Origin: Macrostomum lignano
Taxonomy: Eukaryota
DNA: 64,000 nucleotides
Reading direction: 5' to 3'
NCBI GenBank assembly: GCA_002269645.1
Contig: NIVC01002292.1
Location: 1-64,000 of the forward strand
Part shown: positions 5,908 to 62,345 of the stretch, piece by piece
Layout: every line of letters starts with the position of its first letter
How positions within the stretch are numbered: position 1 is the first letter of the stretch
Translations under genes and position numbers: made by a program
Notes under the pieces: generated by a model
Told to the model about the DNA's origin: nothing
The model's input: the letters and a program-made list of their open reading frames with translations, nothing else
Database searches by the model: none

Positions 5908-8900
5908 TCTTCTTCTTCCATGCAATTCCCAGCACGTCTGGGCTAGCGCGACGGCGCGAATAAAGATGGGGGCCAACGCCCCATGGCACGGAGAAGTGCG
6001 AAGACTTTGGGCGACGGAGGGTCCAGCGGGTCGGCGTACCGTCCCCCTGTGGACAGAGCCGGAGTAGATGCTCGACAGTGTCAGCCCGAGACGGCACCGG
6101 TGGCGCCGCAGAGCAGGCTGACCCCAGCACGGAGTTGGTTAAGCGCCACAACTTCGGCGCGGTTACCGCAAGGGGGCGGCTTCAGCGCCGGGCCCAGAAC
6201 GCGGGCATCGAGGTCACGGCGGTCGCGACGGATGGCAGTGCGAGCGGGGCGAGGTTAATCGGGGCGTCGTGCTGCGGGAGCGAGGCGGCCTCGGCAGCGG
6301 CGGTGTCGGCGGCCTCGTTCCCCTCCAGGCCCGCGCAATCAGGAACCCAAACGAACTGGATCTTAGAGCTCCTGGCGAGGTCAGCGATGGCATGCCAACA
6401 GGCGGAGCCCAGCGTAGTGCGCTGCTCAATGGGCCCCCGTTCGAGCGTGGTGAGGGTGCTAGCTGAGGCTGTCGGTGAGGATGGCGAGGCTGCTGGGCCG
6501 ATGGGCCGCGTTGCGGCAGTGATCGAGGGCGGCGGAGATGGCAACCAGCTCGGCGGTGAAGCTGCAGCAGTGTGCTCCGGCCGGACGGCGGATGACGGTA
6601 CGGATGCCGTCCTGGTCGATGACAGCCGCGCCCCCGCCGTTGCGAGTCCCTCCAGCCGCCGAGCCGTCAGTCTAGGCGACCGCAGTGCAGGTGAGAGCCC
6701 TGGCGATGGCGTCGGTCGCGGCAGAGGCCCGATCAGTGGTGGGGGCGTTGCGACGCACGGTGCGGGCAGTCAGATCAAAGGCGACGTCCGGGTTGCCGTA
6801 CACGTCCCAAGGGCTGGGCGCTGTTCGCGCTCGCGGCGACGTGTTGGAGGTCAACTGCAATGGAGAGCTCGGAGGCATCTCTTCTCCAGTAGCCCCTGAA
6901 CTGGCACGAGCGGTCGAGGTCCAGCCTGACAAAGTCGGCGTCCTCGGCATAAGCAGCAGCCTCGGCAGGCCGGAAATGGGGCTCGTCGTGGATGCGGTTT
7001 TTTAGCCTGGGTCAGCAGGTTTGTGACAGGGTCTTGAAAGCTGGGCAGTGGGGCGGAGCCTGGCGATCCGCTCTGCGAGGTTAGCCGCGCGCTCGATAGT
7101 GACGGTGCTGATGGGCGGCAGTCCCGCGAGGCGGACGGAGATGTGATTCGGCGTGGTGTTGCAGCAGCCCGTAATGAGGCGAGCGCAAATGGATTGCAGT
7201 TGCTTGATAGAACGCTTGGTAGACGGTGCGGCGCCGTTGAGCCAGATGGCACTGCCGTAGTCGGCGCAGGCGCGGACCGTGGCGATGTAGGCGGTGCGGA
7301 GGACCCTCTGGTCGGCCCCGGAGCCGGTGGGCAATGGCTACCAAGGCGGCGCGACGGACCGCCATGCGGCGTCTGACTTCGGCACCGTACTGCGCGAAAT
7401 TCAGCTGACCGTCCATGGTAACGCCAAGTAGCCGCGGGTTCGGGTTGAAACTGAGGTCCCGGCCTTCAATGTTGAGGTTAAGTCGGGCTTTCCCGTTGGA
7501 GGATGTTGGCACATTCAGACAGTTTTCGATGCGTGGCAATGAGGCTGTTATCGTCGGCGTGAAGGTTGATCGCGCACAGAGGACTGGCGAGGCCAACTGC
7601 CGCCCGGAGGTCATTAATGTAGAGAAGCCACCAGAGGGGGGGGGCAGGACGCTGACTTGGCGAAGGCCGTCTTGGACGACCCGCTCCCTGCTGAGGCTGC
7701 CGACCCATCTGACGGAGGCGCGACGGTCGCGAAGAAAACGGTAGATCCACAGGGTGAACCGCGGGGGGACCCCGCATTGCGGATCTTAAGACAGAGAGCG
7801 CGAATCCAGACCCTGTTATAGGCCCTCTTAAAGTCGAGAAGAGTCATAGCGGATCGGAGGCTCTCCAGGCCGTCGAAGATGCTCTGGCAGACATGAGCAA
7901 GGACCTCCTCGGTGCTGCGCCCGGCTCTGAAGCCCGCCTGTTCGGGCGTGAGAATGCTGTTCTATTCGAGCCAGGCGCTAAGACGTTGCTGGACCAGGCG
8001 TTTCGCGGTTTTAGCAATGCAGCTGTTTAAAGCAATCGGACGTAAGGAGGTGGGTAGCGAATGGTCATTGCCCTTCTTAGGGATAGGGACGATGGTGGCG
8101 CGCCGCCACCCGGCCTGGATCGCGCTGCCTCTCCAGACATCGTTCAAGAGATCTAGGAGACGTTGCTCCGCGGCGGCGGGGAGGTGCTTAAGCATTTCAT
8201 TTGCGACGCCATCGGCGGCTTTCCCGGATTTGAGACGGCGGAGGGCGGTCCTAAGTTCGCCGGTGCAGAAGTCGCGTTTGACCGGGGAGTCCTGGGCCGC
8301 CCTGCGGTAAATTTTGAGGTAGCAGTTGGCTTCCGCGCGGACTCGCCCATCGTTCTCGCCGTGCTCGAGTCTGGATTCCGAAGCATAGATGCCCGCGAAG
8401 AGGTTGGATTTTTCGCGATCGGTGACGGCGATGCGCGTGCGTCCAGAGCCGGTGATTTACGTGATGGCGGCGCTCGATCGGGCCGCGGGGCCGTCGCCAC
8501 GGATGTTGCGCAATATGCGGAAAATGTCGGAGTTGAGGTCGAGGTCATTGCAGGTCTGATCCCAGAACCTGCGCTCAAGGACTACTTAAGTGTTCTTAAG
8601 TAGTCCTTGGCTGCGCTTAGCTTCGTATATTGTCTTGCGAAGCGTACCGCGTGCTTGTCCGAAGAGCTCAAGGTTGCTATCCAAAGGGGTGTTAGCGACG
8701 TTCTTGCGGGCTTCGCGGCAGTTCTTTTAAGCGGTGTCGCACTCTTCATTCCAGAAGGATTTCTGCGCGCCAGGTCTGCACCCCCTCGGGATGGAGGTGT
8801 CAGCGGCGCGCAGGATGTCCGCGCACAGGAGGTTATAGGCGCGGTCGCTACTGCGGCGACAGTGTGGGTGCTGCTCGCAGGTCCTCTGGAGCGATTTATT

Positions 8901-9929
8901 TGAAACTCTCCCAGTCGGCTCTCTTGAAAGACCAGCGAGGGCGCTGGGCTGGGGGTCCTCCGACGCTTCCTGACGGTAAAGCAGATCGGCAGGTGGTCGG
9001 AGCCGAGGTCCTCGTCGACGTGCCAGGAGGAGCGCACGGACACGGTAGGAGGGCCGCGGATCCAGGTCGAGTCCGGGGCGGACTTGCCGCCGGTGCTAGG
9101 GTTAATGCGGGTGGCGACGGCCGGTTTGTTGGCGAGGGACAGTTGCCAGCCCGCGGCCCATTCCTCCAGGGTGGCGCCGCCATCGTCGCTGGGCGCGTCC
9201 GCATCCCAACTGCCATGCGCGTTGAAGTCCCCGCCAATTATACAAACTTGAAACCGGGATTTCGTTGAAGTCCGGGGCCCACGTCTCCCCGGGCCGCTGG
9301 CTGCTGGTGGGTGGGGCATGCACACTGGCCAGCCCGACGTTACCCACGTACCCACGGGCCGTGCACGTGGCGAGGTGGAGCCGCGGGGTTGCTGGAGGCG
9401 ATGTCTTCACGAAGGAGAATGAGCACGCCGCCGCGTGCTGTCGGGGGGCGGCAGCTCGCCGGGTAGGCTTCCTGAGCTGTGGGCCGGGGAGCCGCGGGCG
9501 AGGCGGGACGGTCAGTCTGCGCAGTGCCAGTCGGGACGTTGGTCCTCGCGTCCGTATCAGCACAGCAGGGCGCAGTAGAGGGCGCTCCAGCAGCGACTGC
9601 TGCGCAGCCCGGAGCATCTGAGGTGCAGCCAGCCGGAGCAGCCGTTGCAGAACACCGCCACAAACCGCTTGAAGTTGATGATTTCTCCACAACAGCTGCA
9701 GGTCCAGGTGCTGCAGGTTGAGTGTCATCCTGCTGGCTTTTGCCGGGGTATTGTGTCGGGCCGGCCTTGCTTCGGGCCTTTTGGATAACGCCGCGCTCGA
9801 CCCCGTGCCAAGGCTCATCACGCATAGAACAGGCTGTGCGAGAGGACCGGCATCCTGGACACCAGGCGCCGCGGTCGTCGGGCCAGCGGAGCCGGCAGCG
9901 GGGGCGTTTGACGGTCCGAGTCCGGGCTC
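5908..9929 (-). mobile_element. Non-LTR retrotransposon, I-group (Ingi/I/Nimb-like): PHD-APE-RT-RNaseH-CCHC, frameshifted
   Basis: APE (GGDFNAH...LGSDHLPI, about 8900-9260); RT (LRPIALNSCIAK, LLDFKRAYNRV, YINDL, HADD); RNase H (FVWVPDCAGLEGNEAADTAA); C-terminal DTVEHLLRLCP; (GAA)n 3' tail at about 5908-5919. Candidate TSD AAGATTTAAACT (5896-5907) vs AAGACTTAAACT (9940-9951), 1 mismatch. Confidence 0.9.
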
Positions 9930-10089
9930 AAGACTTAATAAGACTTAAACTGCTGCTGGCGCTGCAACCAAAATCACTAAAATGCCGTCAGCTAAAAGAA
10001 TAAAGAGACAGCGCCAAGAGGAACTGAAGGAGGCAGCCAAGTGATCCAGAAAATTAACTGATTGGTCTTGCCTAGGGAATACGAGTACA

Positions 10090-13581: not shown

Positions 13582-16446
<2,865 letters not shown>

Positions 16447-22700: not shown

Positions 22701-23250
22701 TAGTATTGAGTAGTGGGATTTCTACCTTTAGTTCTATCTCAAATCACTTCTCAACTATTGTCTTGCCCGAATCCCATTCACTGGTAGAAATAGCTCCAAC
22801 AACACAAGATTTAAAAAAGCTGATCGTGGAAGCATCAGGGTGTTTTTTCACTGAAAAAATTCTTTGTCTTTGGCACTTCCGCTGCAAAAAATGCCTGCGG
22901 AAGTGAATTGAAGGCCGCTGTTTTCTCAGCAAACCTGACTGCTGGATAACAATAGCTGGGGCTCCTTCATCCTGAATGCCTGTCCGGAAGGCGTTCGAGG
23001 AAACGTGCAGGTGCCAAACGCAGCAGGCTGGCGGGCGGAGGCTGAGGCAAAGCCAACAACTGAACTCGGGGAGAAAAAGCGGCTCGAATTCCTGCAATCT
23101 TCCTGCCGAGCTTCCCTCCCCCTCCCTCCCCAGCTGCCTATAAATCGATGACCCCATTGGCTTATCAGGGGCTGCAACCAAAATCTAAAAGCTGTCGTGT
23201 CGTCCCACTCCATTTTTCAGACCGAAACTAATCAGAAGGGCACGAGAGGC

Positions 23251-23883
23251 ATGGCTGCCATCCGATCTCTGGCCCTGGCAACCCTACTGCTGGCGGCAGT
23301 CTCTTTGGCTCACAGCTCCGACTCGCCACTTCGTGAGTTCGCATTCGAGCTCACCTGGCTCGACTCAGGTGCGATGAGATCAATGCTTTGCACTGACTAA
23401 CACTTTTTCTGTCGAAAATTACCCGCAGACTCTGGCAGCCATCACGGAGACCACCTGTCTGAGTCGTCCGGGCACTCAGGAGCGCTGATAACCGGCGAGG
23501 CCGGGAAGCGCTACGCCGACTTCAGGAAGCGCTACGCCGACTTCAGGAAGCGCTACGCCGACTTCAGGAAGCGCTACGCCGGCTTCAAGCGTTATGCTGA
23601 CTTCAAACGCTCTGCTGAATACAAGCCCTACGCCGACTTCAGGAAGCGCTACGCCGACTTCAAACGCTCTGCTGAATACAAGCCCTACGCCGATTTCAGG
23701 AAGCGCTACGCCGACTTCAAGAAACGTTACGCCGACTTCAGGAAGCGCTACGCCGACTTCAAACGCTCTGCTGAATACAAGCCCTACGCCGACTTCAGGA
23801 AGCGCTACGCCGACTTCAAGAAACGTTACGCCGACTTTAGGAAGCGCTACGCGGATTTCAAGCGAAGCGGAGACGACGAGTGA
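23251..23883 (+). CDS. Neuropeptide prohormone (YADF / SAEYKPYADF / YAGF repeats), 2 exons, 190 aa
   Basis: Exon 1 23251-23368 encodes signal peptide MAAIRSLALATLLLAAVSLAHS. 60-bp GT-AG intron with CTAAC branch site, phase 1. Exon 2 23429-23883 encodes 15 YA(D/G)F units each bounded by KR/RKR/KKR, ending SGDDE-stop. Synonymous variation is present among repeats. Confidence 0.9.
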
Positions 23884-24134
23884 AAAAGCCGGGACTGACT
23901 CTAGCAAGCTAAACTGCTACTGCAAATCCCTCATATCTAGTCCGATTGCCAATGCAGAGAAGACTTGTAGCAGCAGTCGACTTTCGGGTCCTAGCATTGC
24001 AGAATAAAACAAAACAACTTGATGCGCAGTGTATGAAAATCATTCTAAATTCTTGAGTTTTGACTTGCTCTTTTGAATTATTGAATACATGTAGTTGAAG
24101 TTTGAACTTAGAGAGGTGAGAATATGGAGTGGTG

Positions 24135-24866
24135 TGAGCATGAAGTGGTGTGAGCATGGAGTGGGTGAGCATGGGGTGATGTGAGCATGGGGTGATGTGA
24201 GCATGGAGTGATGTGAGCATGGAGTGATGTGAGCATGGAGTGGGGTGAGCATGGAGTGATGTGAGCATGGAGTGATGTGAGCATGGAGTGGGGTGAGCAT
24301 GGAGTGATGTGAGCATGGAGTGATGTGAGCATGGAGTGGGGTGAGCATGGAGTGATGTGAGCATGGAGTGGGGTGAGCATGGAATGATGTGAGCATGGAG
24401 TGATGTGAGCATGGAGTGGGGTGAGCATGGAGTGGGGTGAGCATGGAGTGATGTGAGCATGGAGTGATGTGAGCATGGAGTGATGTGAGCATGGAGTGAT
24501 GTGAGCATGGAGTGATGTGAGCATAAAGTGGGGTGAGCATGGAGTGATGTGAGCATGGAGTGATGTGAGCATGGAGTGATGTGAGCATGGAGTGATGTGA
24601 GCATGGAGTGATGTGAGCATGGAGTGGGGTGAGCATGGAGTGATGTGAGCATGGAGTGATGTGAGCATGGAGTGGGGTGAGCATGGAGTGATGTGAGCAT
24701 GGAGTGATGTGAGCATGGAGTGGGGTGAGCATGGAGTGATGTGAGCATGGAGTGATGTGAGCATGGAGTGGGGTGAGCATGGAGTGATGTGAGCATGGAG
24801 TGATGTGAGCATGGAGTGATTTGAGCATGGAGTGATGTGAGCATGGAGTGATGTGAGCATGGAGTG
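24135..24866 (+). repeat. 16-bp minisatellite GAGCATGGAGTG(AT/GG)GT, about 45 copies
   Basis: Read directly; it explains the repetitive minus-strand ORFs 23909-24860. Confidence 0.97.
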
Positions 24867-27800
24867 AGGGTGGGTGGGTATTCTCTATTGTTCCCGGGTG
24901 GAGGTAGATGCTTGTTTTGAATTTAATTTAAAAAGCCCTGCGAAGTGTCTAATTTTGTAGCAACATTATAGTTATATACTTGTACATGTAGTTGAACTCT
25001 CAGACATTGCAACATTGGCCTGTTGGTCTAGAAAAATTTCCGCACCAGGCTACTCATCAGTAGCTGACAGAGCTTTAGCCGAAGCCGAGAAAGGCCGATC
25101 GGATTTGTCCCAGTCCAGAAAGTGAGGGCAACGAAGGCCAGAGGATGCAACAGCTGCGCAGTTCTGCTGCAAAAAAGAAGATGCAGAGTTTGTCCGCCCC
25201 CGCCCGCCGCCGCACGCATTTGCCACCAGCGACATGGCAGTTTCGCCCATCCACCAGTTGGCTAAAATTAGCCTGCCGTCAAATTCGGACGATATCCGTT
25301 GAAGTGAGTGACAGTTTTGGACTGCAGGCGCGCGCTGCGATTGAGTTGCCGAGGCTCTGCGTTGCAAAAAAACTGCGGATTGCAAAACAGCGCGTAGAAC
25401 GCAGAGAAGCAGAGAAGCAGAGAGCATCAGCTACATTTGAAGCCCCGACCGGGCTGCATCAGATTTCAGTAGGAGATTTCACACTTTGAAACAGGAGTGA
25501 ATTTGAGAATCGGATCGCTACTTGTTTAGAAACAACGAGCAAAAGTTTTGCAGAATTGCGCGGCAGAGTTGGCTGTCCGAAAATAGAAAGGCGCGTTTTA
25601 TTGTCAAGAAGCCGCTACATCGCAGCTGAAGGAAGGCTGCGCGCGATAAAAGACAGGAAACGTTTCCTAGAAAAACATTCCTGCTTAACATCTGGTCGGA
25701 TTAAGCAGCTTCCGTTGCTGTAAACCCAGAGCCGTCCCTGCCAGTGCATCAAATGCAGTCAGCTGCAATTGCCGCCCAAACAGCCACCGCCACCCTCCGC
25801 AAAGAGATAAAGGGTTCGGCGGCAGCAGTAGGCATTACGAGGCGAAATGAAATGCGTTTCGGCCACGAAGGAGTTCGCACGAAAATTGCCCCAAATATTG
25901 GGATTTTATTTCCCGTAGCTGCGCGAGACCCAAATCAGCATCGCTAGTCGAATCTGACACAGCCGCGGCCTCGGTGGCCTCCCTTCCCCCAGCTGACCTT
26001 TCCCTCGCAGATCCCGCGGTGAATGAACGGAACCAAGTGGGCAGCGGCAGCGGAAGGGAGAGGACGGACTTTGCCTGGATTTACAACAAGCTTCAACCGC
26101 TGTTACTGCCGATGCCGAGGGAAATGTAGATGCGTTGGCAAGGGAAGAGAGTGCTTGACTGCCGAAGGCTGCCCCTGGCCGCTCTGGATGATGGCTAAGC
26201 CAGGCCGACTGCATAAACAAATGCTGCAAACGGGCCGAGGCAGAGAAGGGAAGGCAGAGTGGAGTGGGGCGGTGGGGAAGCTGCACTCGAGTTTCAGCCA
26301 CAGCAACGGTGGATCGCTGGCGTTTTTCTACCCTTCCTGCAGTGTTGCGGCCTCCTCCAAGCCAAAGTCCCTCGAGGGGAAAAAGGGCGACCCTTCAATC
26401 CTGCCCCCAGCCTGCGGGCTACGGGGACGAAGTGATTAGGGGGGCTCAGGGAGGCCGCGCTGCGGAGATGGGGCTGTTTAAGGGGCTCTCCAGTGCTGCA
26501 GTCCAGCTTGGCTCTCTGCCAGGTCGCTGCTGACTTCACCAGCTGGTCTCCGCTCGGAAGGGGGGGGGGGTTGCAGATAAGCCTTCGCACTCTGGCTGCA
26601 CCGTGGCTGGAACCTCGCTGCAGCTTGGAGTGACAGAGGCCGGGACTGCTTGGCTCGATGAAGACAGACTGTAATCGATCAAGCAGCTTTCTTCAAGATT
26701 TTTGACAGCCACTCTCCAATTCAAATCATCTGCGCCATGCGCAACTGAAGTAGAGGGACAATGCACTGGGCAAATCATGCGGAATCCAATGTAGGCCGGG
26801 TTTACAGCATAAGGCATTAGCGATAAATATAAGTTTTCAGCCTTCTCACCCTTCTGAACTTCTGAATAGCCAATGGAGAAGTATTCACTTTGTCTGAGGT
26901 TGACTGACGAACTTCTCGAGATAAATCATTGTTTGTCGAAGGCCAGAAGCACAAAATATTCCAGTTGCGTTCTCTAAAGAAAGGTTTGTACCAAGCATAA
27001 GCTCCATCGTCGTGGATTTTTTTGATGAGCGCCTACTAGCTTTCAGAAGGGAACTCATTCCGGAAGCTTTACTTTTCAGAATGTCGTGCAAACAGGAAAA
27101 TTTGCGTCCCCCCACTTGATTGCACTCTCCATATTGCAGATTGTATTTTATTGCCAAACAGATCAGCCCTGATTCTGCACTGCAAACAAGTGCGGAAAAT
27201 ACAAATTCCAAAAGTACAGAACAGCGATAGACATGGCAGATCAACAGCGCAGAAGTTTTGTGAAATTTCACATCGAATCCATGCAGATTATTCACCAGAT
27301 AGCTTTATTTTTGTTCTGGCCTGAAGCTGAGTTGGAAGACCAAAAATATGCTGACAAAAAGTTTGATCGAATCGAGAGCGCCGGATTTTGGGGGCCGGAT
27401 TACAGGAAAATAAAGCCGCATTAATGGAACGAAAACACGCGGAAGTTTAGATAAAATATTGTCGATGTTCACCCGCTTTCGCTGTTCCTTCCGGTGTCAA
27501 ACATTGAGAAGGACGCGAGGATCGAAAGTTGTTGTTCTAACAGACAGTTTTGCGCTTCATCTCTATGGAAGAAAACATTGCTCAAACTTGAAAATTAAGT
27601 GGAACGCCTTATGCTTTAAAATTGTAGCCTTCACTTTTCTGCTTAAATTTTCTAATTTTACGCGATTTCTCGGATTCTTTTACTCGTAGTTTTCTTCCAC
27701 GGAAAAGCGTAATTTTACACAGAAATAAACAAAAATGTTCAGCGAAAATAAAAAGCTACTTCAAGCAAATTCAGAAAATAATACTGCCCCGGCTTGAGGC

Positions 27801-28964: not shown

Positions 28965-30503
28965 TCAATTGATTGAGCCCTGAAAGTCATTTCGAAATGA
29001 CGGCAAATCAATGTCGGCAGCCAGAAGAAGATCGGCTTCCTTCAGGCTGGACAAGAGGCCGTCCACGCTGGTGTCAGAGGCGTCAGTGTCCATCTGGCAC
29101 GCGCCGCTGTCTGCAAAGCGTTCGTAAATATTGTATCTCAATTCAGTACTGCAGATTAAATTGAAGAATTAAAGAGATAAACATGTACTGTATTCTGCGT
29201 AGCTTGTGGATTTCACGGATTTCACTTTTATGTTGACTGTCGAGTGCGGCTTACCGATCTCCAGCAGCGGCGGCGTGGCCACGGTCTCCGGGGCCAGTCC
29301 GGAGTCGGAGGACTCCTGCCTGCGGTGGTCGACGCTGAAAACGCACTGCAGCGTGGGATCCGTGACGCCGCCTCCGCCGCTGTGGTGATTGTACATCTCC
29401 TGGCGCATCAGCTGCTCCTGAAAAATTTATTTTGAAAAAAAATCAAAGTTGCGTGGAAAAATGTCATCAAGTCAAAGAACGGTAAGCCGATTGCTCACAT
29501 TTCTAGTCGCCATCTCGAGTTTCCACCGCAGCAACTCCTTCTGGGCGGTCAAGCTGCTCAACTTACGGTACGCGTTGCACCGGCCCAAGTAGTCAATGTG
29601 CAGGCGGCAGACCTCGCTGGGTGATTGGCCCCAGCCCGACTGCAACTGCCGCGGAATGCGCGGATCGTACCAGCTAGTCGATTTGCTGTTGTGATCGACG
29701 AAGTAGATCTTGTTCTCGTCGTTGAAGGCCATCTCCCAGCCGGCGGGCAGCGGACAGATCTCGAACTCGGGCGGACAGGTGGACGGCGAGTCGGCATAGC
29801 TGAAACAGTTTCTCGAAGATGAAGCAAAGAGGATGGAAGCAGAGAGAGTATATAATTGAAGCAAAACTCACGCCTCCTGCATGGCAGCATCTGTCTGGTT
29901 GGTCTGGCGACTCTGCTGGTAGAAGGCTTGCTGACCCGGACCACCTAAGTGCTCCTGCCTGTGCTGCTGCACCGCTGCAGCTGCTGCGGCTGCCGCCGCC
30001 GCCGCCGCCGCTGCCTGGTTGGAGATTTTAGCTGGCGACGAGTGAGCTCGCGTGTGCGACACCGAAGCGGCGGCTCCTCCGCCAACGACACCGACTGACG
30101 CCGGGGCCGTGTCGAGCCGTAGGCCGGGACTCGCGCCTGCAGCATCTGGGCCGCTCTCCGCGGCTACTGAGGCATTTGCGGCACCATGGGTGGCCGTCAA
30201 GAGGGGGCTTCGCTGCATAGAGGACACACCAGACGCGCTGCGAAAGTGGAATTCCCCCACCGGGGGGGACATGTTTGGCTGCAGTACAGACTGGGGACTC
30301 GGGTCGAAAAAGGATCGGGGCAGCTTCCTGTCTTTCAGTGGCTTGGCTGACGAAAAGGAGCAAGAGGGATCAGTGACAACCCTGAACATCTCTTCAAGGC
30401 TGTTGCTTGAATCTTCTCTTGTGTGCACCTGAATATGACCGGCATTGGCCTGGCCGGAACAGCCTCCACCGAATCCCTCAGAGTACTGAGGAGGAAGCGC
30501 CAT
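28965..30503 (-). CDS. yki: Yorkie/YAP transcriptional co-activator, 4 exons, 413 aa
   Basis: Exons 30503-29872, 29799-29499, 29417-29255, 29110-28965, phase-compatible (1242 nt). TEAD-binding IQVHTREDS..LEEMF..PLKDRKLPRSFF; WW domain PLPAGWEMAF..YFVDHNSKSTSWYDPR; four HxRxxS motifs (HTREDS, HFRSAS, HTRAHS, HRRQES); DSG phosphodegron. Confidence 0.93.
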
Positions 30504-48630: not shown

Positions 48631-49977
48631 CCCCTAATTTTCTCGTGTGGGTGGAGTCAGCCGATCACCTTCTTGACGCCTTGGATCCACCAGTGTTCTT
48701 TAATTTGTTTTGACATAAGAAATGAACAAAGCGCAACTTTCTGGACCTGACCGCAGTATCGCGAATTTGAATAAACATAAGGACGATTTGAATCGCATTT
48801 TGAACTTAAACATCCAGTACGTTAAGTTATAGCTCTGAACTTGAGCCAGCTACTTTTAAGCAATATAACTACGAAAAAGTTAGAGGAAACATTTTTTTCT
48901 GCTTCCCGAGAGTAATGTCCCCTAATTTTGGATAGGAGGTGGGCCAACCGCCTTTGACGACCCAATTCCCCCTGAATTCGCCAGTAATTGAGATGAATAT
49001 TACAAGACAGTGGGTGTCAAGTCCCCTAATTCAGTGCATGTTTTAGTCTACTAGCCAATAATAGCGTACATGTAGTAGTCAGATTGATGAAAAAGAAAAA
49101 TTATCTGAATTCTATATTCTACATCAATTACAGTCTTCAATCTGACGAGAGCCGAGAGGATGTAACTAAATTTGTGGGTGTTTTTCAGAACAATAGGTTA
49201 CGCTGCACATGTTTGACATTGTTTTCATTTCTTAGCACACACAACAAGAATCAGTGAATATCAATCATTTTTGCTACTAGCATTTCACCATTTTTTTTCT
49301 TTGTAAGAACGACTATTTTATCTTAAATCGAAATCACTTCCTTCCAGGCGCGGCGGAGCCGGGGGGCAGGGTGGGCAATTACATGCCTACCCAATAAATT
49401 TGTTGCGGGGGGCATTCATTGCCTTCCCAATATTGCAATCACATCAAATGATAAAGGCACGTCCTGCCCCCCCCCACTAACTTTTGCGCCCCTCTCTTCC
49501 TCAGATTCAGACTCATGCTTATCGCCCGCCTCACTCTCCCGTGAACCAATCCTGAGTGCGACATTCCCAAAACTTAACTGGGAAATTCCTAGTAAAACAA
49601 AGTATAAAGCGTATCGTATTGGAATGACTAATGTATATATTGCATTCCAGTATACGAGCGAAAAGAAAAAATAACGATACAAAATTAAAATAATAAGTAT
49701 TGAACAGTTAATTATAATTTGAAATAGGAAAACAATTAGGTTATAGTTAACGCGATAATACTACTGAAAAATCTACGAATTCAAATACGTTTCAGATTGA
49801 AAACCTGTTAAGTGTCTAGTGACTAGGCACTAGGCAGTTGCTACATTCGAAATTATTTTATGGATTTGTAATGCTTGGGCCTGCTATAGTTTAATACTTC
49901 TGAACGAAAGAATATTCATTAAGTAGTTTATGTCTGCTTCTAAAATATTTCAAGTTATTCGTATTCAACTCTGCAAA

Positions 49978-52744
49978 ATGCGAACTATTGCGACTGCACT
50001 TGGTCTTTGCGTCATTATGATGCTTCTTTTTAGTAGTTTTCATACTGGTGCATCGGCCAAAGGACCCAAAGTAACTGACAAGGTAACAATATATAAACAA
50101 AAAAGTACTTTAATTATATACATGTCATAATAGTATATACAAGGACCACTGGGTTCACAAAGTTAAGTCAATGATTGATGATAGCATGGTTGTTTACCTG
50201 TTTAGTTGCTTAATAATATAAATGTATTTAGATTAAAAGAATATTGTTTAAATAAAAGTAGGCACTCAATAAATAGGCCGCTAATAACATGTTATAGGCC
50301 TAGTTTCTCCTTAAAATATATTGTTTCTTACTAAGCTTAATAAGGTTACTTAAAAATGATTATCTTCTATAAAAATAATTTATTCATGCAAAACCATAGT
50401 TTGCCAAATATGTTATTGTCTTCTAAAAGCAGTAGAGAAAAAAATTATCAAGGACCTAAGAGATAAATAAACAGCTAAAGGCCAAAGTTTGCCTATGCAT
50501 GCCCATACATGCGCAACAGTCGGCCGAGTCGGCCGATCCGGCCGACCGATTTGGCGGCCAACCAAGGAAGTCGCAAAAACACCCACCCAAAAAACACAAA
50601 GTAGTAGTACTAAGTAGCTGACGAGGCATTTTGGCTTAATAAGAAAGTTATAGTTACTCCTGCCGTTTACCCAAAGTTGCGTTAATTTTGCTATAGGGTT
50701 TTTTACATGTAAGTCGCATTTTTTGCCAAAAACTACGTCGCATTTTTGTTAAAACTAAGTCGCATGGCCGACCAAATTTTGGAGGTTGCGCATGTATGTG
50801 CATGCCAATGCATTTGCCAATAGAATAGGCTTTTACCAGTTATTAAATTTGGTATTCTTATTTTTTATTATATAATAGCTCAAGACTAAAGTTTACAAAA
50901 ACCTATTGCATATATTTTTTACATTGTTTAGTTATCAAAAAAGCTATTTTGAATCCCAAGAATAATGGAAATTTATCTTTATTTCTAGATTTATATATAA
51001 ATAGTTTTGGGGATTGGAATTTATTGGGCTCAAAATCTATTGGTTTCAACCTCTTATAATAAAAGTTATAACAGTGGCAAATCTAGGATTTTTAAAGTAA
51101 GGGGGCAGTCCTAGGCAGAATGGCCCAACTTTTTGGGTTGGCCTAAAATAAGCTTTAAATAAGCCAAAAGTTGCAATGCTCTCCCCTTATATACAAGTTC
51201 AGCCATGGCAAAAGAGGAGGGTGACTGCCCCCTTCTCCTGCCCCCCTTCTGGATCTGCCACTGAGTTTTAATTTATATATTGTCAAACAACTTTATTTAG
51301 GCCTAACAAATTTCTAATAGCAATAAACATACTTATATCTATTTAACAATCTTAACTTACATTAGGTTATGTAAGGACAATAAAAAATTTTTTATATAAT
51401 ATAAAAGTAATAGTTTGTGTCCAAGTCTAATATTTTTAGTACTTATATATTAATAGTATATAGTATTTAACTTAAAATATTAAGTTAATAGTATTTTAGT
51501 TTTTGACTAGGCTTATAATGGTGCCATTCTACCATTAGACTTGAACAAGGCTATATTTATAGCTTATATATATATTATTATTATATTTTTTATAGTGTTA
51601 TAGCATACCATAGCTATAGTCATAGTTGCAGTGGAACATTAACTATTATAGTACTTTAAGTAAAAGTTTATAGATATTTTAGCTAGATTTTCTGTGTAGT
51701 TATTTTATGATCAAGAATAAAATCATCCAGGTAAATAGCCTATATCTAGCACCCATAATTGGCTTAGGATTGCCATGTATTCACATATAAGGGCCAACCC
51801 CTATGGCATAGAAAGTGTATATGCATGACAATTTGAAATTTAAGGCTGCTTTAGTGCTATACAGCTTGTGTATAGGCCAGGAGTCAATGGAATAGGCAGA
51901 AAGCTTTGCCATCTAATCCTGCTTTAGCTCTCATTAAATTTTCAAATACTGGTGTGAGTGCACTGTGTGGCTTGCTAATTTTGTAATGAAATCAGGAGTT
52001 GAAAAGCCTCTATCCAGCTTTTGGGTCCTTTGAAACTTTACAATAGCAGTCTGGCCTGTTTGAGGTCTCTTCTCAACTCTCTTACCTCCTGTTCCTTCCC
52101 TCTCCTTTCCTCTCTCATCTGGCCCGCAGCCATTAGCTAGGTTCTTTATCTGGCTTTTGAGAAAAGTTTGCCGGACCCTGATCTAAATAAACCTTCGCTC
52201 CCAGGTGTTCTTCGACATCACCATCGGTGGGAAGCCAGCTGGCCGCATCGTCATCGGCCTGTTTGGCGGCAGCGTGCCAAAAACTGTGAAGAATTTCAAG
52301 TCGCTGGCGGAGGGCGTGCCCCAGGAGTCTGGCGGCAGCATGGGCTACAAGGGGTCCAAGTTTCACCGCGTCATCAAGGGCTTCATGATTCAGGGCGGCG
52401 ATTTCACTAAAGGCGACGGCACCGGAGGCAAGTCCATCTATGGCGAGAAGTTCAAGGACGAGAACTTCAAGCTGAAGCATTACGGCGCCGGCTGGTGCTC
52501 CATGGCCAACGCTGGCCCGGACACAAATGGCAGCCAGTTCTTCATCACCGTGGCGAAGACCCAGTGGCTGGACGGCCGGCACGTTGTATTCGGCAAAGTG
52601 CTAGAGGGCATGAGCGTGGTGAGGACGATCGAGACCACCCCAACTAACCAGAATGACCGGCCATCTCAGGATGTGGTCATCGCCGACTGCGGCTCGCTAC
52701 CTGTTGACCAGCCGTTCGCTGTTGAAAAGGCTCCGTCTGATTAG
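49978..52744 (+). CDS. PPIB: Cyclophilin B (secretory peptidyl-prolyl isomerase), 2 exons, 214 aa
   Basis: Exon 1 49978-50082 (signal peptide + GPKVTDK), 2122-bp phase-0 intron, exon 2 52205-52744 with [43 protein letters not shown]. Confidence 0.93.
50504..50798. mobile_element. MITE with 14-bp TIRs (hAT- or P-type) in the PPIB intron
   Basis: TIRs CATACATGCGCAAC / GTTGCGCATGTATG; perfect 8-bp TSD TGCATGCC. Confidence 0.88.
51072..51263. mobile_element. Older hAT-like MITE in the PPIB intron
   Basis: TIRs CAGTGGCAAATCTAG / CTGGATCTGCCACTG (CpG-decayed); 8-bp TSD AGTTATAA / AGTTTTAA. Confidence 0.75.
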
Positions 52745-53554: not shown

Positions 53555-54840
53555 GGAAGGTGGAGAGGCAGATTCTCAGGCACTGAGGGGGAGCGGAGAG
53601 GCAGACTCTCAAGCACTGAGGGAGAGTGGAAAGGCAGATTCTCAGGCACTGAGGGAGAGCGGAAAGGCAGATTCTCAGGCACTGAGGGAGAAGCAGATTC
53701 TCAAGCACTGATGGAGAGGCAGATTCTCAAGCACTGAGGGAGAGCGGAGAGGCAGATTCTCAGGCACTGAGGGAGAGCGGAGAAGCAGATTCTCAGGCAC
53801 TGAGGGAGAGCGAAGAGGCAGATTCTCAGGCACTGAGGGAGAGCGAAGAGGCAGATTCTCAGGCACTGAGGGAGAGCGGAAAGGCAGATTCTCAGGCACT
53901 GAGGGAGAAGCAGATTCTCAAGCACTGATGGAGAGGCAGATTCTCAAGCACTGAGGGAGAGCGGAGAGGCAGATTCTCAGGCACTGAGGGAGAGCGGAGA
54001 AGCAGATTCTCAGGCACTGAGGGAGAGCGAAGAGGCAGATTCTCAGGCACTGAGGGAGAGCGAAGAGGCAGATTCTCAGGCACTGAGGGAGAGCGGAAAG
54101 GCAGATTCTCAGGCACTGAGGGAGAAGCAGATTCTCAAGCACTGATGGAGAGGCAGATTCTCAAGCACTGAGGGAGAGCGGAGAGGCAGATTCTCAGGCA
54201 CTGAGGGAGAGCGGAGAAGCAGATTCTCAGGCACTGAGGGAGAGCGAAGAGGCAGATTCTCAGGCACTGAGGGAGAGCGAAGAGGCAGATTCTCAAGCAC
54301 TGAGGGAGAGCGGAGAGGCAGATTCTCAGGCACTAAGGGAGAGCGGAGAGGCAGATTCTCAGGCACTGAGGGAGAGGCAGATTCTCAAGCACTGAGGAGA
54401 GCAGAGGCAGATTCTCAAGCACTGAGGGAGAGCAGAGGCAGATTCTCAAGCACTGAGGGAGAGCAGAGGCAGATTCTCAAGCACTGAGGGAGAGCGGAGA
54501 GGCAGATTCTCAAGCACTGAGGGAGAGCAGAGGCAGATTCTCAGGCACTGAGGGAGAGGCAGATTCTCAAGCACTGATGGAGAGCGGAGAGGCAGATTCT
54601 CAAGCACTGAGGGAGAGCAGAGCAGATTCTCAAGCAATGAGGGAGAGCGGAGAGGCAGATTCTCAAGCACTGAGGGAGAGCGGAGAGGCAGGTTCTCAAG
54701 CACTGAGGGAGAGCGGAGAGGCAGGTTCTCAGGCACTAAGGGAGAGCGAAGAGGCAGATTTTCAGGCACTGAGGGAGAGCGGAGAGGCAGATTTTCAGGC
54801 ACTGAGGGAGAGCGGAGAGGCAGACTCTCAAGCACTGACT
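53555..54840 (+). repeat. 33-bp minisatellite (GGCAGATTCTCAGGCACTGAGGGAGAGCGGAGA) with shorter variants and a 217-bp higher-order period
   Basis: Read directly; identical ORFs recur at 53675/53892 and 53701/53918, offset by 217 bp. Confidence 0.95.
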
Positions 54841-60100: not shown

Positions 60101-62345
60101 TTCCACGACACAGACGGAAAGGACGTCAGAAATCACAAAGTCGCAGACAATATCAAGGCTGAACTGAATCTGTGCGGACTGAAACACGAAAACATTGCAA
60201 AATTTGTTGAAATATGCTACAATGCCGATAGCCTGCAGATCACTGTTGTGATGGAGCGCGTCTACGGTAAAACGCTGAAAAATTTTCTTAATGGAGAACC
60301 TGTTCAAATCGAAGTGAACCGAAAGCTAACAACCCAGGTGAGACTTGCCTAGATTTGAAAGTTAGAGAAGAATTTCATTTTAAACTCTCAAGTGGAAACC
60401 CTGCTTACAGATCTGCAGCGCTCTACAGTATATGCACAGCATGGGTGTTGTTCACCGGGACATCAACGGCAACAACATCCTTATAGATGGAAATAAACTG
60501 GTGAAGCTTATCGACTTTGGTCTGTCTCGCAGGCTGTGCGAATCGGACACGCACTGCCTGGAGAGCAGCACGATGCCGAAAGGGACTCTCCACTTCCTGG
60601 CTCCGGAGAGATTCGGCGGAGACGACCAGGAGGGCGGCAGCTCCGGTCGAATCTGCCCCAAATCGGACGTCTGGGCCCTCGGTTGCATCGTGTACTACAT
60701 GGCAAATGGCAGAGTGCCGTATGACAACATAAAAAGCTTCGTGCATCTTGGCAGCAAAATTTCAACGTTCGGCGCTCCTTCACTGGCGAGTTCACCGGAG
60801 ACATGCGACATCAACATGATAGATTTTTACGGCTGCTGTACAGACAAGAATTACAAAACTCGAAAGTCGTCAGCTGAGCTGCTCAAGCATCCATTTATCG
60901 TGTGCAGTACGTGCAGATTAAGTTGTTGAATCAATTTAAATATTTTAGTATATACTAGGTTTAAGTATAGCAAACCTTTAGTTCACTAAGGGGATGGGGT
61001 GAGTAGCAAAGCGCTAAAACACGTCATACCTGATGACGAGAGTGTCCGGGCCGCTCAAAGCTCTCAGGATGTACCTGCGTGTGTTAAGATCTACTTTGAT
61101 CCTAATTTGCGGTTGCACTCAAAGGTTCTCTTGCGATCGCAGACTATTAAACTCATACTCATCAGTAGCTGTCACTAGCTGACTATATAGTTTAGGCCCT
61201 GCTTCTAGTACAGATATTAATTGGAAAACTGATGACAATCATTTCATCCAAACGAAATAAAAAAATTTTAGATTCTGACCATTTGGCCGTAAAAAGTCAG
61301 AATAGCAATGACGATGACAATGAGAAAGGCAGCGGTCCAGACGGAGGCGATTGCAAGCGCAGGCCAAATGCAGGCCACGGAGATGGCACAAATGATCCCA
61401 GAGGAGCCGCTTCTAATGACGGAGGTGGTCGAGGCGGGCCAAGTGGCAGCTCTGAAGGCAGCATATTGAATAACCCCGGAGCCGTTGCGTCTCAGAGGTT
61501 GGTCCCTGACAGACTAAAAGTATATTTGATATATTTGCATCACCAGAAGAACAAATCGCTATTGCAGAACCGCTGAAGACGACGACCGATACCCAGTGAC
61601 GTCTCCGCGACGGGGTGTTTGTCTAATAATCAACGTTGAAAAGTATGACAGGAGGTCACTCCTCGAGGATCGGGAAGGATCTCGCTTGGACGTAGATAGG
61701 CTATCAACACTGTTCTCAAAGATGGCTTATAATGTCCAGTTGGCGGAAAATCCAACTAGTCAGGAGATGCCGGAACAAGTTCACGCGGCTTCAGTTGAAT
61801 TTGGCCGTTCCAACCTCGGCTGCTTTGTGTGCGTCATCATGGCTCACGGCTCTAGTGGGGAAGTCTATGGAAGCGATGGAGAATCCGTAGGCTTAGAATC
61901 AATTATGCGGCCTCTGTACCCTGTTCACTGCACCAGTCTGCTCAACAAGCCAAAAATTTTCATTATTCAAGCGTGTCGTGGATTTAATGCTGACGAGTCG
62001 CGCTTTACATCAAATCGCACGGAAGATTCCAGATTCAGCCCTTATAAAAAAGATTTTCTGGTCTGCCATTCAAGCACTAAGGGCGAAACAGCCCATCGGG
62101 ATCGGTATAATGGCTCACTGTTCGTACAGACATTCTGCGACGTCATTCGTGACCGGTTTCGTCACGATCATCTGACGGACATTATGGCCAATGTAAACTG
62201 CAGACTAATGAAGGCTCAATCTTCAGCTCGGCATGGGTTCGATGATATTGTTGTATCCGAGTACTGCTCGACCCTGACAAAGAAGTGCTACCTGGATTCT
62301 GATATAGTAACAGATGTAAGGGTTAATTCTGAGGAGGACATGTAG
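57118..62345 (+). CDS. Ankyrin-repeat + Ser/Thr protein kinase + caspase fusion protein, 9 exons, about 1047 aa
   Basis: Exons 57118-57132 (tentative), 57952-58451, 58537-58573, 58847-59316, 59534-59794, 59977-60337, 60411-60906, 61272-61497, 61568-62345. All introns are GT-AG with matching phases (0,2,0,2,2,0,1,2), 3144 nt in total. ANK motifs (GDSLAHLAA, GLTPFMEAA, GWSSLHSAA, NWTALMQAA); kinase (IGRGAFGTV, YCAK, HRDINGNN, DFG, LAPE, DVWALG); caspase (RGVCLIIN, REGSRLD, MAHG, QACRG, DFL...AHR...GSLF). Confidence 0.8.

What the first reader, a model, noticed from the sequence alone, without database searches (positions are those of the whole stretch)
23251..23883. Hidden neuropeptide precursor releasing non-amidated YADF tetrapeptides
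Seen: exon 2 is absent from the plus-strand ORF track; splicing gives signal peptide + acidic spacer + 15 basic-flanked units. After convertase and carboxypeptidase processing these would give YADF x11, SAEYKPYADF x3 and YAGF x1, with no Gly amidation donor. Established: the KR-flanked multi-copy layout is the hallmark of prohormones. Inference: I do not recognise this peptide family. The KR-Tyr-X-X-Phe-KR layout parallels proenkephalin (YGGF), most likely by convergence, but is worth testing on opioid/somatostatin-clade GPCRs.
Basis: partly seen in the sequence, partly recalled or inferred. Interest (0 to 1): 0.72.

Follow-up and report, generated by a model that had tools for sequence, protein, structure and literature searches.

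The report
Unannotated flatworm YADF peptide precursor
A small two-exon gene, missing from the public annotation of the flatworm Macrostomum lignano, encodes a secreted precursor that should be cut into about 15 copies of the tiny peptide Tyr-Ala-Asp-Phe; it is most likely an undescribed signalling peptide, interesting but of a familiar kind.

Summary
The window is Macrostomum lignano contig NIVC01002292.1. Joining exon 1 (23251-23332) to exon 2 (23429-23883) across a 96-nt GTGAGT...CAG intron gives a 178-aa protein. It has a signal peptide, a His/Ser-rich acidic spacer, and 15 units ending in an invariant Lys-Arg. Predicted products are YADF x11, YAGF x1 and SAEYKPYADF x3, with no Gly amidation donor.

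The array is under coding constraint. Unit spacings are all multiples of 3. Twelve of 14 differences between repeats are synonymous (8 of 8 between higher-order copies, P about 2e-6). Two control minisatellites in the same window fail this test. A lone TATAAA and a lone AATAAA bracket the gene.

The protein is absent from a 15-billion-protein collection, so the gene is unannotated. No homologue was found among 1.84 billion representative proteins. Hits to proenkephalin rest only on KR-Y-x-x-F repeats, and the opioid N-terminal domain is absent.

The closest described family is the spiralian AxxxDF peptides (nemertean ASWLDF, brachiopod AKFNDF). It shares aromatic-x-Asp-Phe-COOH plus KR flanks, but membership is unproven.

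Transcription, splicing, cleavage and neuronal expression are untested. Verdict: a real prohormone-type gene, a new member of a known kind, of moderate interest.

The parts
23139..23144 (+). TATAAA, candidate core promoter element, 112 nt upstream of the ATG
   Evidence: It is the only TATAAA in 23000-24200. The only ATG between it and the start codon lies at 23148, upstream of the expected transcription start. Promoter function is inferred, not tested.
23251..23332 (+). Coding part of exon 1: Met1 to the first base of codon 28. It encodes the signal peptide MAAIRSLALATLLLAAVSLAHS and the start of the spacer.
   Evidence: The hydrophobic core at residues 6-17 has a Kyte-Doolittle 11-residue mean of up to 2.7, with small residues at -3/-1 (S-L-A|H or A-H-S|S). 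An in-frame stop lies upstream at 23194-23196.
23333..23428 (+). Intron, 96 nt, phase 1: GTGAGT donor, ACTAAC-like branch site, CAG acceptor
   Evidence: Joining the consensus donor to the first CAG after the in-frame TAA (23398-23400) restores the frame. Splicing itself is not shown; no RNA data were available.
23429..23505 (+). Exon 2, spacer: ...HSGSHHGDHLSESSGHSGALITGEAG. His/Ser-rich, net acidic, no Lys or Arg.
23506..23865 (+). Peptide array, residues 54-173. A leading KR is followed by 15 YA[D/G]F cores, each followed by KR, RKR or KKR. Three cores carry the N-terminal extension SAEYKP. There is a 99-nt higher-order repeat.
   Evidence: P2 = Lys and P1 = Arg are invariant at all 16 sites. 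There are 12 synonymous and 2 non-synonymous differences between units.
23866..23883 (+). C-terminal tail SGDDE and the TGA stop codon
24003..24008 (+). AATAAA, candidate polyadenylation signal, 120 nt after the stop codon
   Evidence: It is the only AATAAA or ATTAAA in 23000-24200. Function is inferred.

Best explanation
This is a real, unannotated two-exon gene of Macrostomum lignano that encodes a prohormone-type precursor.

The proposed mechanism is as follows. The 22-residue signal peptide takes the protein into the secretory pathway. A subtilisin-like prohormone convertase then cuts after each invariant Lys-Arg. M. lignano has a nervous-system PC2 homologue whose knock-down is lethal. 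A carboxypeptidase E/D-type enzyme removes the remaining basic residues.

The products would be 11 YADF, 1 YAGF and 3 SAEYKPYADF (Lys-Pro is not a cleavage site), plus a His-rich spacer peptide and SGDDE. All would have free acid C-termini, because no Gly donor is present. The peptides most likely act as a neuropeptide or peptide hormone on an unidentified receptor.

Shown here: the gene anatomy, the coding constraint on the peptide frame, the absence from annotation, and the lack of detectable homologues. Inferred: transcription and splicing, cleavage, neuronal expression and receptor signalling.
For: Organism: a cyclophilin B exon in the window is 99% identical to M. lignano BOX15_Mlig005757g1. 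The window coordinates equal those of NIVC01002292.1 in GCA_002269645.1.

Gene anatomy:
- ATG, consensus GTGAGT donor, CAG acceptor and a phase-compatible join.
- A classic signal peptide.
- A single TATAAA 112 nt upstream and a single AATAAA 120 nt downstream.

Coding constraint:
- Spacings are all multiples of 3, despite the 9% indels that TRF reports.
- Six of 7 core differences fall at third codon positions.
- Between 99-nt higher-order copies there are 8 synonymous and 0 non-synonymous differences. Over the whole array the count is 12 versus 2.
- Only 19% of random single-base changes would be synonymous, giving binomial P of about 2e-6 and 2e-7.
- The same substitutions are mostly non-synonymous in the other two frames. 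Two control minisatellites in the window show mostly non-synonymous variation in every frame.

Cleavage logic: the two residues before every predicted cut are always Lys-Arg, while the third basic residue varies between R, K and none.

Processing machinery: a PC2 homologue is expressed in the M. lignano nervous system and its RNAi is lethal (PMC4490696).

Precedent: MS-supported multi-copy, non-amidated, KR-flanked ...xDF peptides exist in other spiralians (PMC8557429).
Against: - There is no transcript, junction-read or peptide evidence. None could be obtained with these tools.
- No protein with the exon 1-exon 2 junction exists in a collection that includes assemblies of public sequencing runs. 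This is weak evidence, because tandem repeats assemble poorly and gene calling there is not splice-aware.
- No orthologue was found, so there is no cross-species conservation.
- The homeologous contig NIVC01003551.1 could not be reached at the expected position.
- The repeats are young; several units are identical at the DNA level. The number of independent substitutions behind the selection test is therefore small.
- Nothing in the sequence says 'neuron' rather than 'gland'.
Confidence: 0.65

Rival explanations
1. The gene is real and its product is secreted, but it is not a neuropeptide. Either a gland releases the peptides to the outside (pheromone, seminal-fluid, pharyngeal or defensive product), or the Tyr/Phe/Lys/Arg-rich repeat protein works largely intact as a structural, adhesive or eggshell-type material. 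Flatworm eggshell precursors are Tyr/Lys/Asp-rich repeat proteins that are cross-linked through DOPA (from my own knowledge of schistosome and Fasciola eggshell proteins).
For: - The repeat region is about 15% Tyr, 12% Phe and 37% Lys+Arg. Such a composition is also seen in cation-pi adhesive and tanning proteins.
- The sequence gives no evidence of tissue.
- M. lignano has many lineage-specific secreted gland products.
Against: - P2 = Lys and P1 = Arg are invariant at all 16 sites, while the other basic position varies. This is what a convertase site requires, not what bulk charge requires.
- The peptide core is held constant by synonymous-only change.
- The protein is small, with no Gly/Ser/His-rich or Cys domains typical of flatworm adhesive or eggshell proteins.
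- phmmer found no eggshell or adhesive relatives.
Confidence: 0.2
2. It is the flatworm member of the spiralian AxxxDF family (nemertean ASWLDF, brachiopod AKFNDF), shortened at the N-terminus. On this reading it is an already described family in a new phylum. This rivals the best explanation on identity and novelty, not on mechanism.
For: - Shared C-terminal motif: aromatic(-4)-x-Asp-Phe-COOH, followed by KR or KKR.
- Shared non-amidated state and multi-copy layout. The copies are directly tandem in brachiopods, as they are here.
- M. lignano is a spiralian.
- BLASTP against the Lineus precursor gives 45.8 bits. The native core order ranks 1st of 24 permutations against both Lineus and Lingula.
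- An environmental precursor, P0001 (KR-MGPQDWADF-xKR), has Trp like ASWLDF and Ala-Asp-Phe like YADF.
Against: - The family's name-giving Ala at -6 and its hexapeptide length are absent. SAEYKPYADF has Lys at -6.
- The conserved C-terminal region of nemertean precursors (...MDPETIKVIREMLLKD...) is absent.
- Proenkephalins score the same (40-43 bits) and also rank first in the permutation test. This level of similarity therefore cannot separate homology from convergence.
- The Lingula score is only 21 bits.
- No AxxxDF-type protein appeared among the 63 phmmer hits.
Confidence: 0.3
3. It is a non-coding minisatellite that happens to be open in one frame next to a chance signal-peptide-like ORF, or a dead or never-expressed gene.
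For: - The window holds at least 12 minisatellite arrays.
- Several give long spurious ORFs, for example 311 aa over the 16-nt array at 23909-24844.
- One array (53562-54838) even reads RR-GRFSGTEGE-RR in one frame.
- The gene is not annotated.
Against: - Variation is synonymous-only and in this frame alone, with P of about 1e-6. Control arrays fail the same test and do not hold a frame.
- All indels are multiples of 3.
- The signal peptide, consensus splice sites with the correct phase, TATAAA and AATAAA are all in the right places.
Confidence: 0.07
4. It is a true homologue of the vertebrate opioid precursors (proenkephalin family).
For: phmmer with exon 2 retrieves proenkephalin and prodynorphin at E 8e-6 to 8e-4. 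Both share the KR-Tyr-x-x-Phe-basic layout.
Against: - The Cys-rich Opiods_neuropep domain (PF01160) that defines the family is present in those hits and absent here.
- The core is YADF, not YGGF.
- The similarity is confined to 2-3 residues next to the KR sites. It equals the similarity to unrelated families.
Confidence: 0.02

Closest known systems
Spiralian AxxxDF peptides (ASWLDF in nemerteans, AKFNDF in brachiopods; Thiel et al. 2021, PMC8557429)
   Same: - Signal peptide, then an acidic spacer, then many copies of one short peptide bounded by KR or KKR.
- Free-acid (non-amidated) C-terminus ending in Asp-Phe, with an aromatic residue at -4 (W, F or Y).
- Copies directly abut in brachiopods (KRAKFNDFKRAKFNDF), as they do here.
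- Found in a spiralian host.
- The receptor is unknown for both.
   Different: - Here the product is a tetrapeptide, not a hexapeptide.
- There is no Ala at -6.
- Tyr replaces Trp or Phe at -4.
- The conserved C-terminal region of nemertean precursors is missing.
- Sequence similarity is only at motif level (21-46 bits), no better than to proenkephalin.
Vertebrate proenkephalin / prodynorphin (Pfam PF01160 Opiods_neuropep)
   Same: - Multi-copy KR-Tyr-x-x-Phe-(x)-KR layout.
- Tyr1 and Phe4 have the same spacing as in YGGF.
- The single YAGF unit differs from YGGF at one residue.
- Retrieved by phmmer at E 8e-6 to 8e-4.
   Different: - There is no Cys-rich N-terminal domain.
- An acidic Asp sits at position 3.
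- There is no fifth residue (Met or Leu).
- The host is a protostome, in which no opioid precursor family is known.
- The resemblance is best read as convergence.
Achatin-type peptides (GFAD, GFFD; molluscs, annelids, nemerteans)
   Same: From my own knowledge, with context: multi-copy, KR-flanked, non-amidated acidic tetrapeptides containing Phe, Ala and Asp. They are a precedent that free-acid tetrapeptides can be bioactive, and that residue 2 can be converted to the D-form.
   Different: - The motif is Gly-aromatic-x-Asp, with N-terminal Gly and C-terminal Asp.
- YADF has neither, and its residue order differs.
- No sequence comparison was run, because no achatin precursor sequence was in hand.
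Environmental precursors P0001 (JGI metatranscriptome 3300031709) and P0172 (ENA ERZ17082975)
   Same: - P0001 has a signal peptide and about 12 units of the form KR-MGPQ[D/S]WA[D/N]F-x-KR. It is the best BLASTP match at 66.6 bits.
- P0172 has a signal peptide and 3 copies of KRSAEPARPYG[N/D]FEVSY[S/R]DWEKKEKA. This parallels the higher-order unit KRSAEYKPYADFRKRYADFKR.
   Different: - The source organisms are unknown.
- The peptides are longer.
- P0172 lacks the internal cleavage site.
- P0001 usually keeps one extra residue after Phe.
- Significance is inflated by the repeats, so the relationship is unproven.
Known flatworm neuropeptide precursors (FLPs, NPFs, npp/spp sets of Schmidtea; Collins et al. 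2010)
   Same: Same phylum, and the same PC2-dependent processing logic (PMC2953531, PMC4490696).
   Different: - No ...ADF, YAEF, YGDF or DFKR motif occurs in the text or the 8 supplementary files of Collins et al..
- Most described flatworm families are amidated.
- McVeigh et al. 2009, which used M. lignano ESTs, could not be read.

Membership tests
Prohormone-type multi-copy peptide precursor (the general kind) | N-terminal signal peptide | tested here: met
   A positive n-region (Arg5), a hydrophobic core at residues 6-17, and small residues at -3/-1. This is a heuristic check; no SignalP run was possible.
Prohormone-type multi-copy peptide precursor (the general kind) | Repeated near-identical peptides bounded by dibasic convertase sites | tested here: met
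   There are 15 cores and 16 sites, and every site ends in Lys-Arg.
Prohormone-type multi-copy peptide precursor (the general kind) | Selection acts on the peptide sequence, not just on the DNA repeat | tested here: met
   12 synonymous versus 2 non-synonymous differences, with P of about 1e-6 to 1e-7. Control arrays fail the test.
Prohormone-type multi-copy peptide precursor (the general kind) | Transcribed, spliced, cleaved in vivo, and expressed in neurons or endocrine cells | not testable with these tools
   No RNA-seq, peptidomic or in situ data were available. A PC2 homologue exists in the species (PMC4490696).
Spiralian AxxxDF (ASWLDF/AKFNDF) | C-terminal Asp-Phe free acid followed by KR | tested here: met
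   Fourteen of 15 cores end in DF and one ends in GF. No Gly donor is present (compared).
Spiralian AxxxDF (ASWLDF/AKFNDF) | Ala at -6, and a hexapeptide of the form A-x-x-x-D-F | tested here: not met
   The product is a tetrapeptide. The extended form SAEYKPYADF has Lys at -6.
Spiralian AxxxDF (ASWLDF/AKFNDF) | Aromatic or hydrophobic residue at -4 (usually W or F in described members; V in one Lingula unit, AKVNDF) | tested here: met
   Tyr sits at -4 in all 15 cores.
Spiralian AxxxDF (ASWLDF/AKFNDF) | Conserved C-terminal precursor region (ALGSWIEAKQ...MDPETIKVIREMLLKD in nemerteans) | tested here: not met
   The precursor ends in KRSGDDE* directly after the array. The brachiopod sequences are partial, so it is unclear whether this feature defines the whole family.
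Spiralian AxxxDF (ASWLDF/AKFNDF) | Precursor-level sequence similarity beyond what unrelated KR-repeat precursors give | tested here: inconclusive
   Scores are 45.8 bits against Lineus and 21.2 against Lingula, with rank 1 of 24 in the core-permutation test. Proenkephalins give 40-43 bits and also rank first.
Spiralian AxxxDF (ASWLDF/AKFNDF) | Orthologous receptor | not testable with these tools
   No receptor for the family was mentioned in the passages of PMC8557429 retrieved, and no other paper on the family was found.
Vertebrate opioid precursors (PF01160) | Cys-rich N-terminal Opiods_neuropep domain | tested here: not met
   No Pfam hit was found even at E <= 10. The domain is present in the true opioid hits P0183, P0160 and P0151.
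Vertebrate opioid precursors (PF01160) | YGGF[M/L] core | tested here: not met
   The cores are YADF x14 and YAGF x1, with no fifth residue.
Achatin family | Gly-[Phe/Tyr]-x-Asp tetrapeptide (definition from my own knowledge) | tested here: not met
   There is no N-terminal Gly, and the C-terminal residue is Phe, not Asp.
Amidated flatworm families (FLP, NPF, most npp) | C-terminal Gly amidation donor before the basic site | tested here: not met
   No unit has Gly before its basic run.

The most novel reading that the evidence does not exclude
YADF and YAGF may be the endogenous Tyr1...Phe4 ligands behind the long-unexplained opioid-like pharmacology of flatworms.

Planarians respond to DAMGO (Tyr-D-Ala-Gly-MePhe-Gly-ol) in a naltrexone-sensitive way, and Met-enkephalin-like immunoreactivity was reported in 1983. 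Yet no opioid precursor or receptor has been identified in them (PMC9362985).

YAGF has the same four-residue backbone as the N-terminus of DAMGO and DADLE. If Ala2 were converted to the D-form, as in achatin or dermorphin, the match would be exact. The old antisera could also have cross-reacted with KR-Tyr-x-x-Phe peptides.

This link rests on recalled chemistry and was not tested here.
Probability: 0.04. Interest if true: 0.8.

Novelty: new member of a known kind. Interest (0 to 1): 0.4.

Why it matters
If it is expressed and processed, this gene adds an undescribed, unusually small, non-amidated peptide to the signalling repertoire of a transgenic flatworm model.

It also illustrates a systematic blind spot. 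The coding exon has no start codon. The repeats break short-read assemblies. The absence of a Gly-Lys-Arg amidation motif hides the gene from the pattern searches that found most flatworm neuropeptides. More such genes may therefore be missing from flatworm catalogues.

If the motif link holds, it would extend the aromatic-x-Asp-Phe (AxxxDF) peptides from nemerteans and brachiopods to Platyhelminthes. That would suggest an older spiralian system whose receptor has not been identified.

The ligands are cheap to synthesise, which suits GPCR deorphanisation. The gene also offers a simple test for D-amino-acid isomerisation at position 2.

This is still one more orphan lineage-restricted precursor among the dozens known in flatworms, so the interest is moderate.

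Tried and rejected
1. Fungal Kex2-processed repeat or RiPP (ustiloxin-type YAIG) precursor. I considered this at first because of the short intron with a CTAAC branch site. I rejected it once the window proved to be M. lignano and held a QACRG caspase.

2. Word-indexed homologue search with the full protein. It returned only P0001.

3. Exhaustive phmmer of exon 2 against 1.84 billion representatives. I inspected all 63 hits. Almost all are unrelated tandem-repeat proteins. The exceptions are three vertebrate opioid precursors, P0001 and P0172.

4. JGI metagenome scan. It found 599 pattern matches, and none was confirmed.

5. Pfam and Rfam found nothing at the locus.

6. Reaching the homeologous copy on NIVC01003551.1.
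   - The 10-kb flank limit, and the rule that only contiguous window ORFs can be looked up, stopped the walk at 24.7 kb.
   - A homologue search with its first exon returned nothing.
   - Ten ORFs between 15 and 25 kb are not in the collection.

7. Literature. No YADF, KRYADF or WADF peptide is described. Nothing was found in Collins et al. 2010, including its supplements. McVeigh et al. 2009 is not held.

8. Core-permutation BLASTP as a homology test. It works against composition artefacts. It ranks the native order first or second against AxxxDF, proenkephalin/prodynorphin, P0001 and P0172 alike, so it cannot decide family membership.

9. Structure prediction was not run, because a cleaved repeat precursor has no fold to compare.
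Full report
**1. What organism and where**

A 179-aa cyclophilin B exon at 52205-52744 is 99% identical to Macrostomum lignano BOX15_Mlig005757g1. Look-ups of that protein and of two window ORFs place the window on contig NIVC01002292.1 of assembly GCA_002269645.1. Record coordinates equal window coordinates.

The window is 47% G+C and holds at least 12 minisatellite arrays. It also contains:
- a LINE fragment;
- a YAP-like gene at 28965-30503 on the minus strand;
- a 1062-aa ankyrin-kinase-caspase gene at 57118-62345.

A second contig, NIVC01003551.1, carries the same cyclophilin and a 1060-aa version of the caspase gene. It is probably the homeologue.

**2. The observation**

- The ATG is at 23251.
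- Exon 1 ends at 23332, before GTGAGT.
- A 96-nt intron ends in CAG at 23428.
- Exon 2 runs to TGA at 23881-23883.

The product is 178 aa:
- signal peptide MAAIRSLALATLLLAAVSLAHS;
- a His/Ser-rich acidic spacer with no Lys or Arg;
- a leading GKR, followed by 15 cores.

The exon 2 frame is open for 160 codons but contains no ATG, GTG or TTG. This is why no ORF finder lists it. The cores are YADF x14 and YAGF x1, and three of the YADF cores are preceded by SAEYKP. Each core is followed by KR, RKR or KKR. Lys-Pro is not a convertase site. The predicted products are therefore YADF x11, YAGF x1 and SAEYKPYADF x3, as reported, with no Gly amidation donor.

**3. Is it a gene or a minisatellite?**

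This matters because the window is full of minisatellites. Several give long meaningless ORFs. One, at 53562-54838, even reads RR-GRFSGTEGE-RR in one frame.

Four tests separate the YADF array from these decoys.

(a) Frame maintenance. TRF reports 9% indels, yet every spacing between cores is 18, 21 or 36 nt.

(b) Codon position. Six of the 7 differences from the core consensus are at third positions.

(c) Synonymous excess.
- Between the 99-nt higher-order copies there are 8 synonymous and 0 non-synonymous differences.
- Across the whole array there are 12 synonymous and 2 non-synonymous: Asp to Gly, making YAGF, and Arg/Lys in the variable basic position.
- Only 19% of random single-base changes in this sequence are synonymous. 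The binomial probabilities are about 2e-6 and 2e-7.
- A transition bias would soften these values but not remove them.

(d) Controls.
- The same substitutions read in the other two frames are mostly non-synonymous (0:5 and 2:3).
- The 33-nt and 42-nt arrays elsewhere in the window show mostly non-synonymous variation in every frame.
- The 33-nt array does not keep one frame.

The gene context adds further support:
- a textbook signal peptide;
- a consensus donor and a phase-correct acceptor;
- the only TATAAA in 1.2 kb, 112 nt before the ATG, with no upstream ATG after the expected start site;
- the only AATAAA, 120 nt after the stop.

I conclude this is a protein-coding gene under purifying selection on the peptide frame.

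**4. Is it annotated or known?**

The gene is not annotated.
- The spliced protein, the unspliced 49-aa product and both off-frame ORFs over the repeats are absent from a 15-billion-sequence collection that includes the GenBank proteins of this assembly.
- Ten further ORFs around the locus are absent too.
- A word-indexed search of 5.8 billion clusters found one weak hit, P0001.

No homologue was found.
- An exhaustive phmmer search of exon 2 against 1.84 billion representatives gave 63 hits at E <= 1e-3, and I read all of them.
- Nearly all are unrelated heptad or tandem-repeat proteins.
- The exceptions are three genuine vertebrate opioid precursors, P0001 and P0172.
- A JGI metagenome scan found nothing.
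- Pfam gives no domain.

The literature is silent. Full-text searches for YADF, KRYADF, WADF and related strings found no peptide of this kind. The planarian prohormone catalogue and its supplements contain no ...ADF or DFKR motif.

**5. The proenkephalin parallel**

P0183, P0160 and P0151 carry Pfam Opiods_neuropep. They match only through KR-Y-G-G-F-x-KR against KR-Y-A-D-F-R-KR. The YADF protein lacks that domain.

**6.

Thiel et al. 2021 (PMC8557429) describe a peptide family 'with the common motif AxxxDF' in nemerteans and brachiopods. Precursor cleavage is supported by mass spectrometry in Lineus longissimus. Their sequence list shows two forms:
- nemertean precursors with many KR-ASWLDF-KR units separated by spacers;
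- brachiopod precursors with directly tandem KR-AKFNDF-KR units.

Aligned from the C-terminus, AS-W-L-D-F, AK-F-N-D-F and Y-A-D-F share the same features: an aromatic residue, any residue, Asp, then Phe as a free acid, followed by KR.

The environmental precursor P0001 (KR-MGPQDWADF-x-KR) sits between them. It has Trp like ASWLDF and Ala-Asp-Phe like YADF.

BLASTP gives these scores:

| Subject | Bits |
|---|---|
| Lineus ASWLDF precursor | 45.8 |
| Lingula AKFNDF precursor | 21.2 |
| P0001 | 66.6 |
| P0172 | 44.7 |

Permuting the four core residues shows that the native order scores best of 24 against each of them. The similarity is therefore not just KR periodicity and composition.

The same test also puts the native order first or second against proenkephalins, which score 40-43 bits. 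It therefore cannot tell homology from convergence.

The family's name-giving Ala at -6, the hexapeptide length and the conserved C-terminal region of nemertean precursors are all missing here. I therefore name AxxxDF as the closest known family and a possible relative (about 0.3). I do not file the gene as a member. No other paper mentions that family.

**7. How it most likely works**

Shown: the gene anatomy, the coding constraint and the invariant Lys-Arg before each predicted cut.

From established knowledge of prohormone processing: signal peptidase acts first. A PC2- or PC1/3-type convertase then cuts after Lys-Arg. Carboxypeptidase E/D trims the basic residues. Without a Gly donor there is no amidation.

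M. lignano has a PC2 homologue expressed in the nervous system, and its knock-down is lethal (PMC4490696).

Inferred: the products are signalling peptides released from neurons or endocrine-like cells and act on an unidentified receptor.

A gland-secreted or structural role for this Tyr/Phe/Lys/Arg-rich protein cannot be excluded from sequence alone (about 0.2). The strict Lys-Arg rule argues for cleavage.

**8. Novelty and score**

This is a new member of a known kind: a lineage-restricted, multi-copy, non-amidated peptide precursor. Three things raise its interest:
- the peptide is very small;
- the gene escaped annotation for identifiable reasons, namely a start-less coding exon, assembly-breaking repeats and no amidation motif;
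- it may extend the aromatic-x-Asp-Phe family to flatworms.

The boldest reading not excluded connects YADF/YAGF, possibly with D-Ala2, to the DAMGO- and naltrexone-sensitive behaviours and enkephalin-like immunoreactivity of planarians. No precursor or receptor for these is known (PMC9362985). I give that about 4%.

Overall interest is 0.4.

**9. Limits**

- No expression, peptide or cross-species evidence could be obtained.
- The homeologous copy could not be reached.
- The repeats are young, so the selection test rests on about 14 substitutions.
- McVeigh et al. 2009, which mined M. lignano ESTs, could not be read. A prior description there cannot be ruled out.

Noticed in passing
window 57118-62345 (+); also L003 16875-22079: One annotated 1062-aa protein combines ankyrin repeats, a protein kinase domain and a caspase domain with an intact QACRG active site. 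A 1060-aa copy lies on the second contig. This is an unusual domain fusion for a caspase.
   Followed up: partly
window 53562-54838: A 33-nt minisatellite reads as RR-GRFSGTEGE-RR repeats in one frame, so it mimics a prohormone. It does not keep one frame, its variation is mostly non-synonymous in all frames, and it has no signal peptide. I treated it as a decoy and used it as a negative control.
   Followed up: yes
window 28965-30503 (-): A YAP/Yorkie-like gene with a TEAD-binding motif and a WW domain ([31 protein letters not shown]). My best GT-AG reconstruction of the annotated 413-aa product is not the sequence on record. A homologue search with its first exon returned no hit at all, although the gene is annotated.
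   Followed up: partly
L001 (JGI 3300031709, 1253 nt), gene 40-948: A complete precursor from a JGI metatranscriptome sample (3300031709; habitat and organism unknown). It has a signal peptide, a Cys-containing peptide and about 12 copies of KR-MGPQ[D/S]WA[D/N]F-x-KR. It may be an undescribed ...WADF peptide family.
   Followed up: partly
L006 (ENA ERZ17082975, 893 nt), gene 154-852: A eukaryotic genomic fragment with TATAAAA, a signal peptide and 3 copies of KRSAEPARPYG[N/D]FEVSY[S/R]DWEKKEKA. It resembles the SAEYKPYADF-RKR-YADF higher-order unit with the internal cleavage site missing. Its 3' end looks like read-through into an intron.
   Followed up: partly
window 24124-24867: A 16-nt minisatellite (ATGGAGTGATGTGAGC, 46 copies) starts about 115 nt after the gene's AATAAA. 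It creates three overlapping spurious minus-strand ORFs of 250-311 aa.
   Followed up: no
window 6000-10000: An island of 62-65% G+C in an otherwise 37-50% region. It holds a LINE-type endonuclease/reverse-transcriptase fragment at 8582-9355 on the minus strand.
   Followed up: no
window 16063-16446 (-): An ORF beginning ...[19 protein letters not shown], which looks like the P-loop exon of a small GTPase. It was not examined further.
   Followed up: no
window 63247-63576 (+): A 109-aa ORF that looks to me like an ENY2-type protein (…RIRRHIRAALNSSGWMDEVKSQCRDLIRAKG…). This is a judgement by eye only.
   Followed up: no
window 49930-52744 (+) and L003 10001-12269: An identical 230-aa cyclophilin B is encoded on two different contigs of the assembly. 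In the 10 kb upstream of it, the copy on the window's contig has called genes (WSC-domain, 419 aa), while the copy on NIVC01003551.1 has none. This is consistent with duplicated (homeologous) regions that have diverged outside conserved genes.
   Followed up: partly
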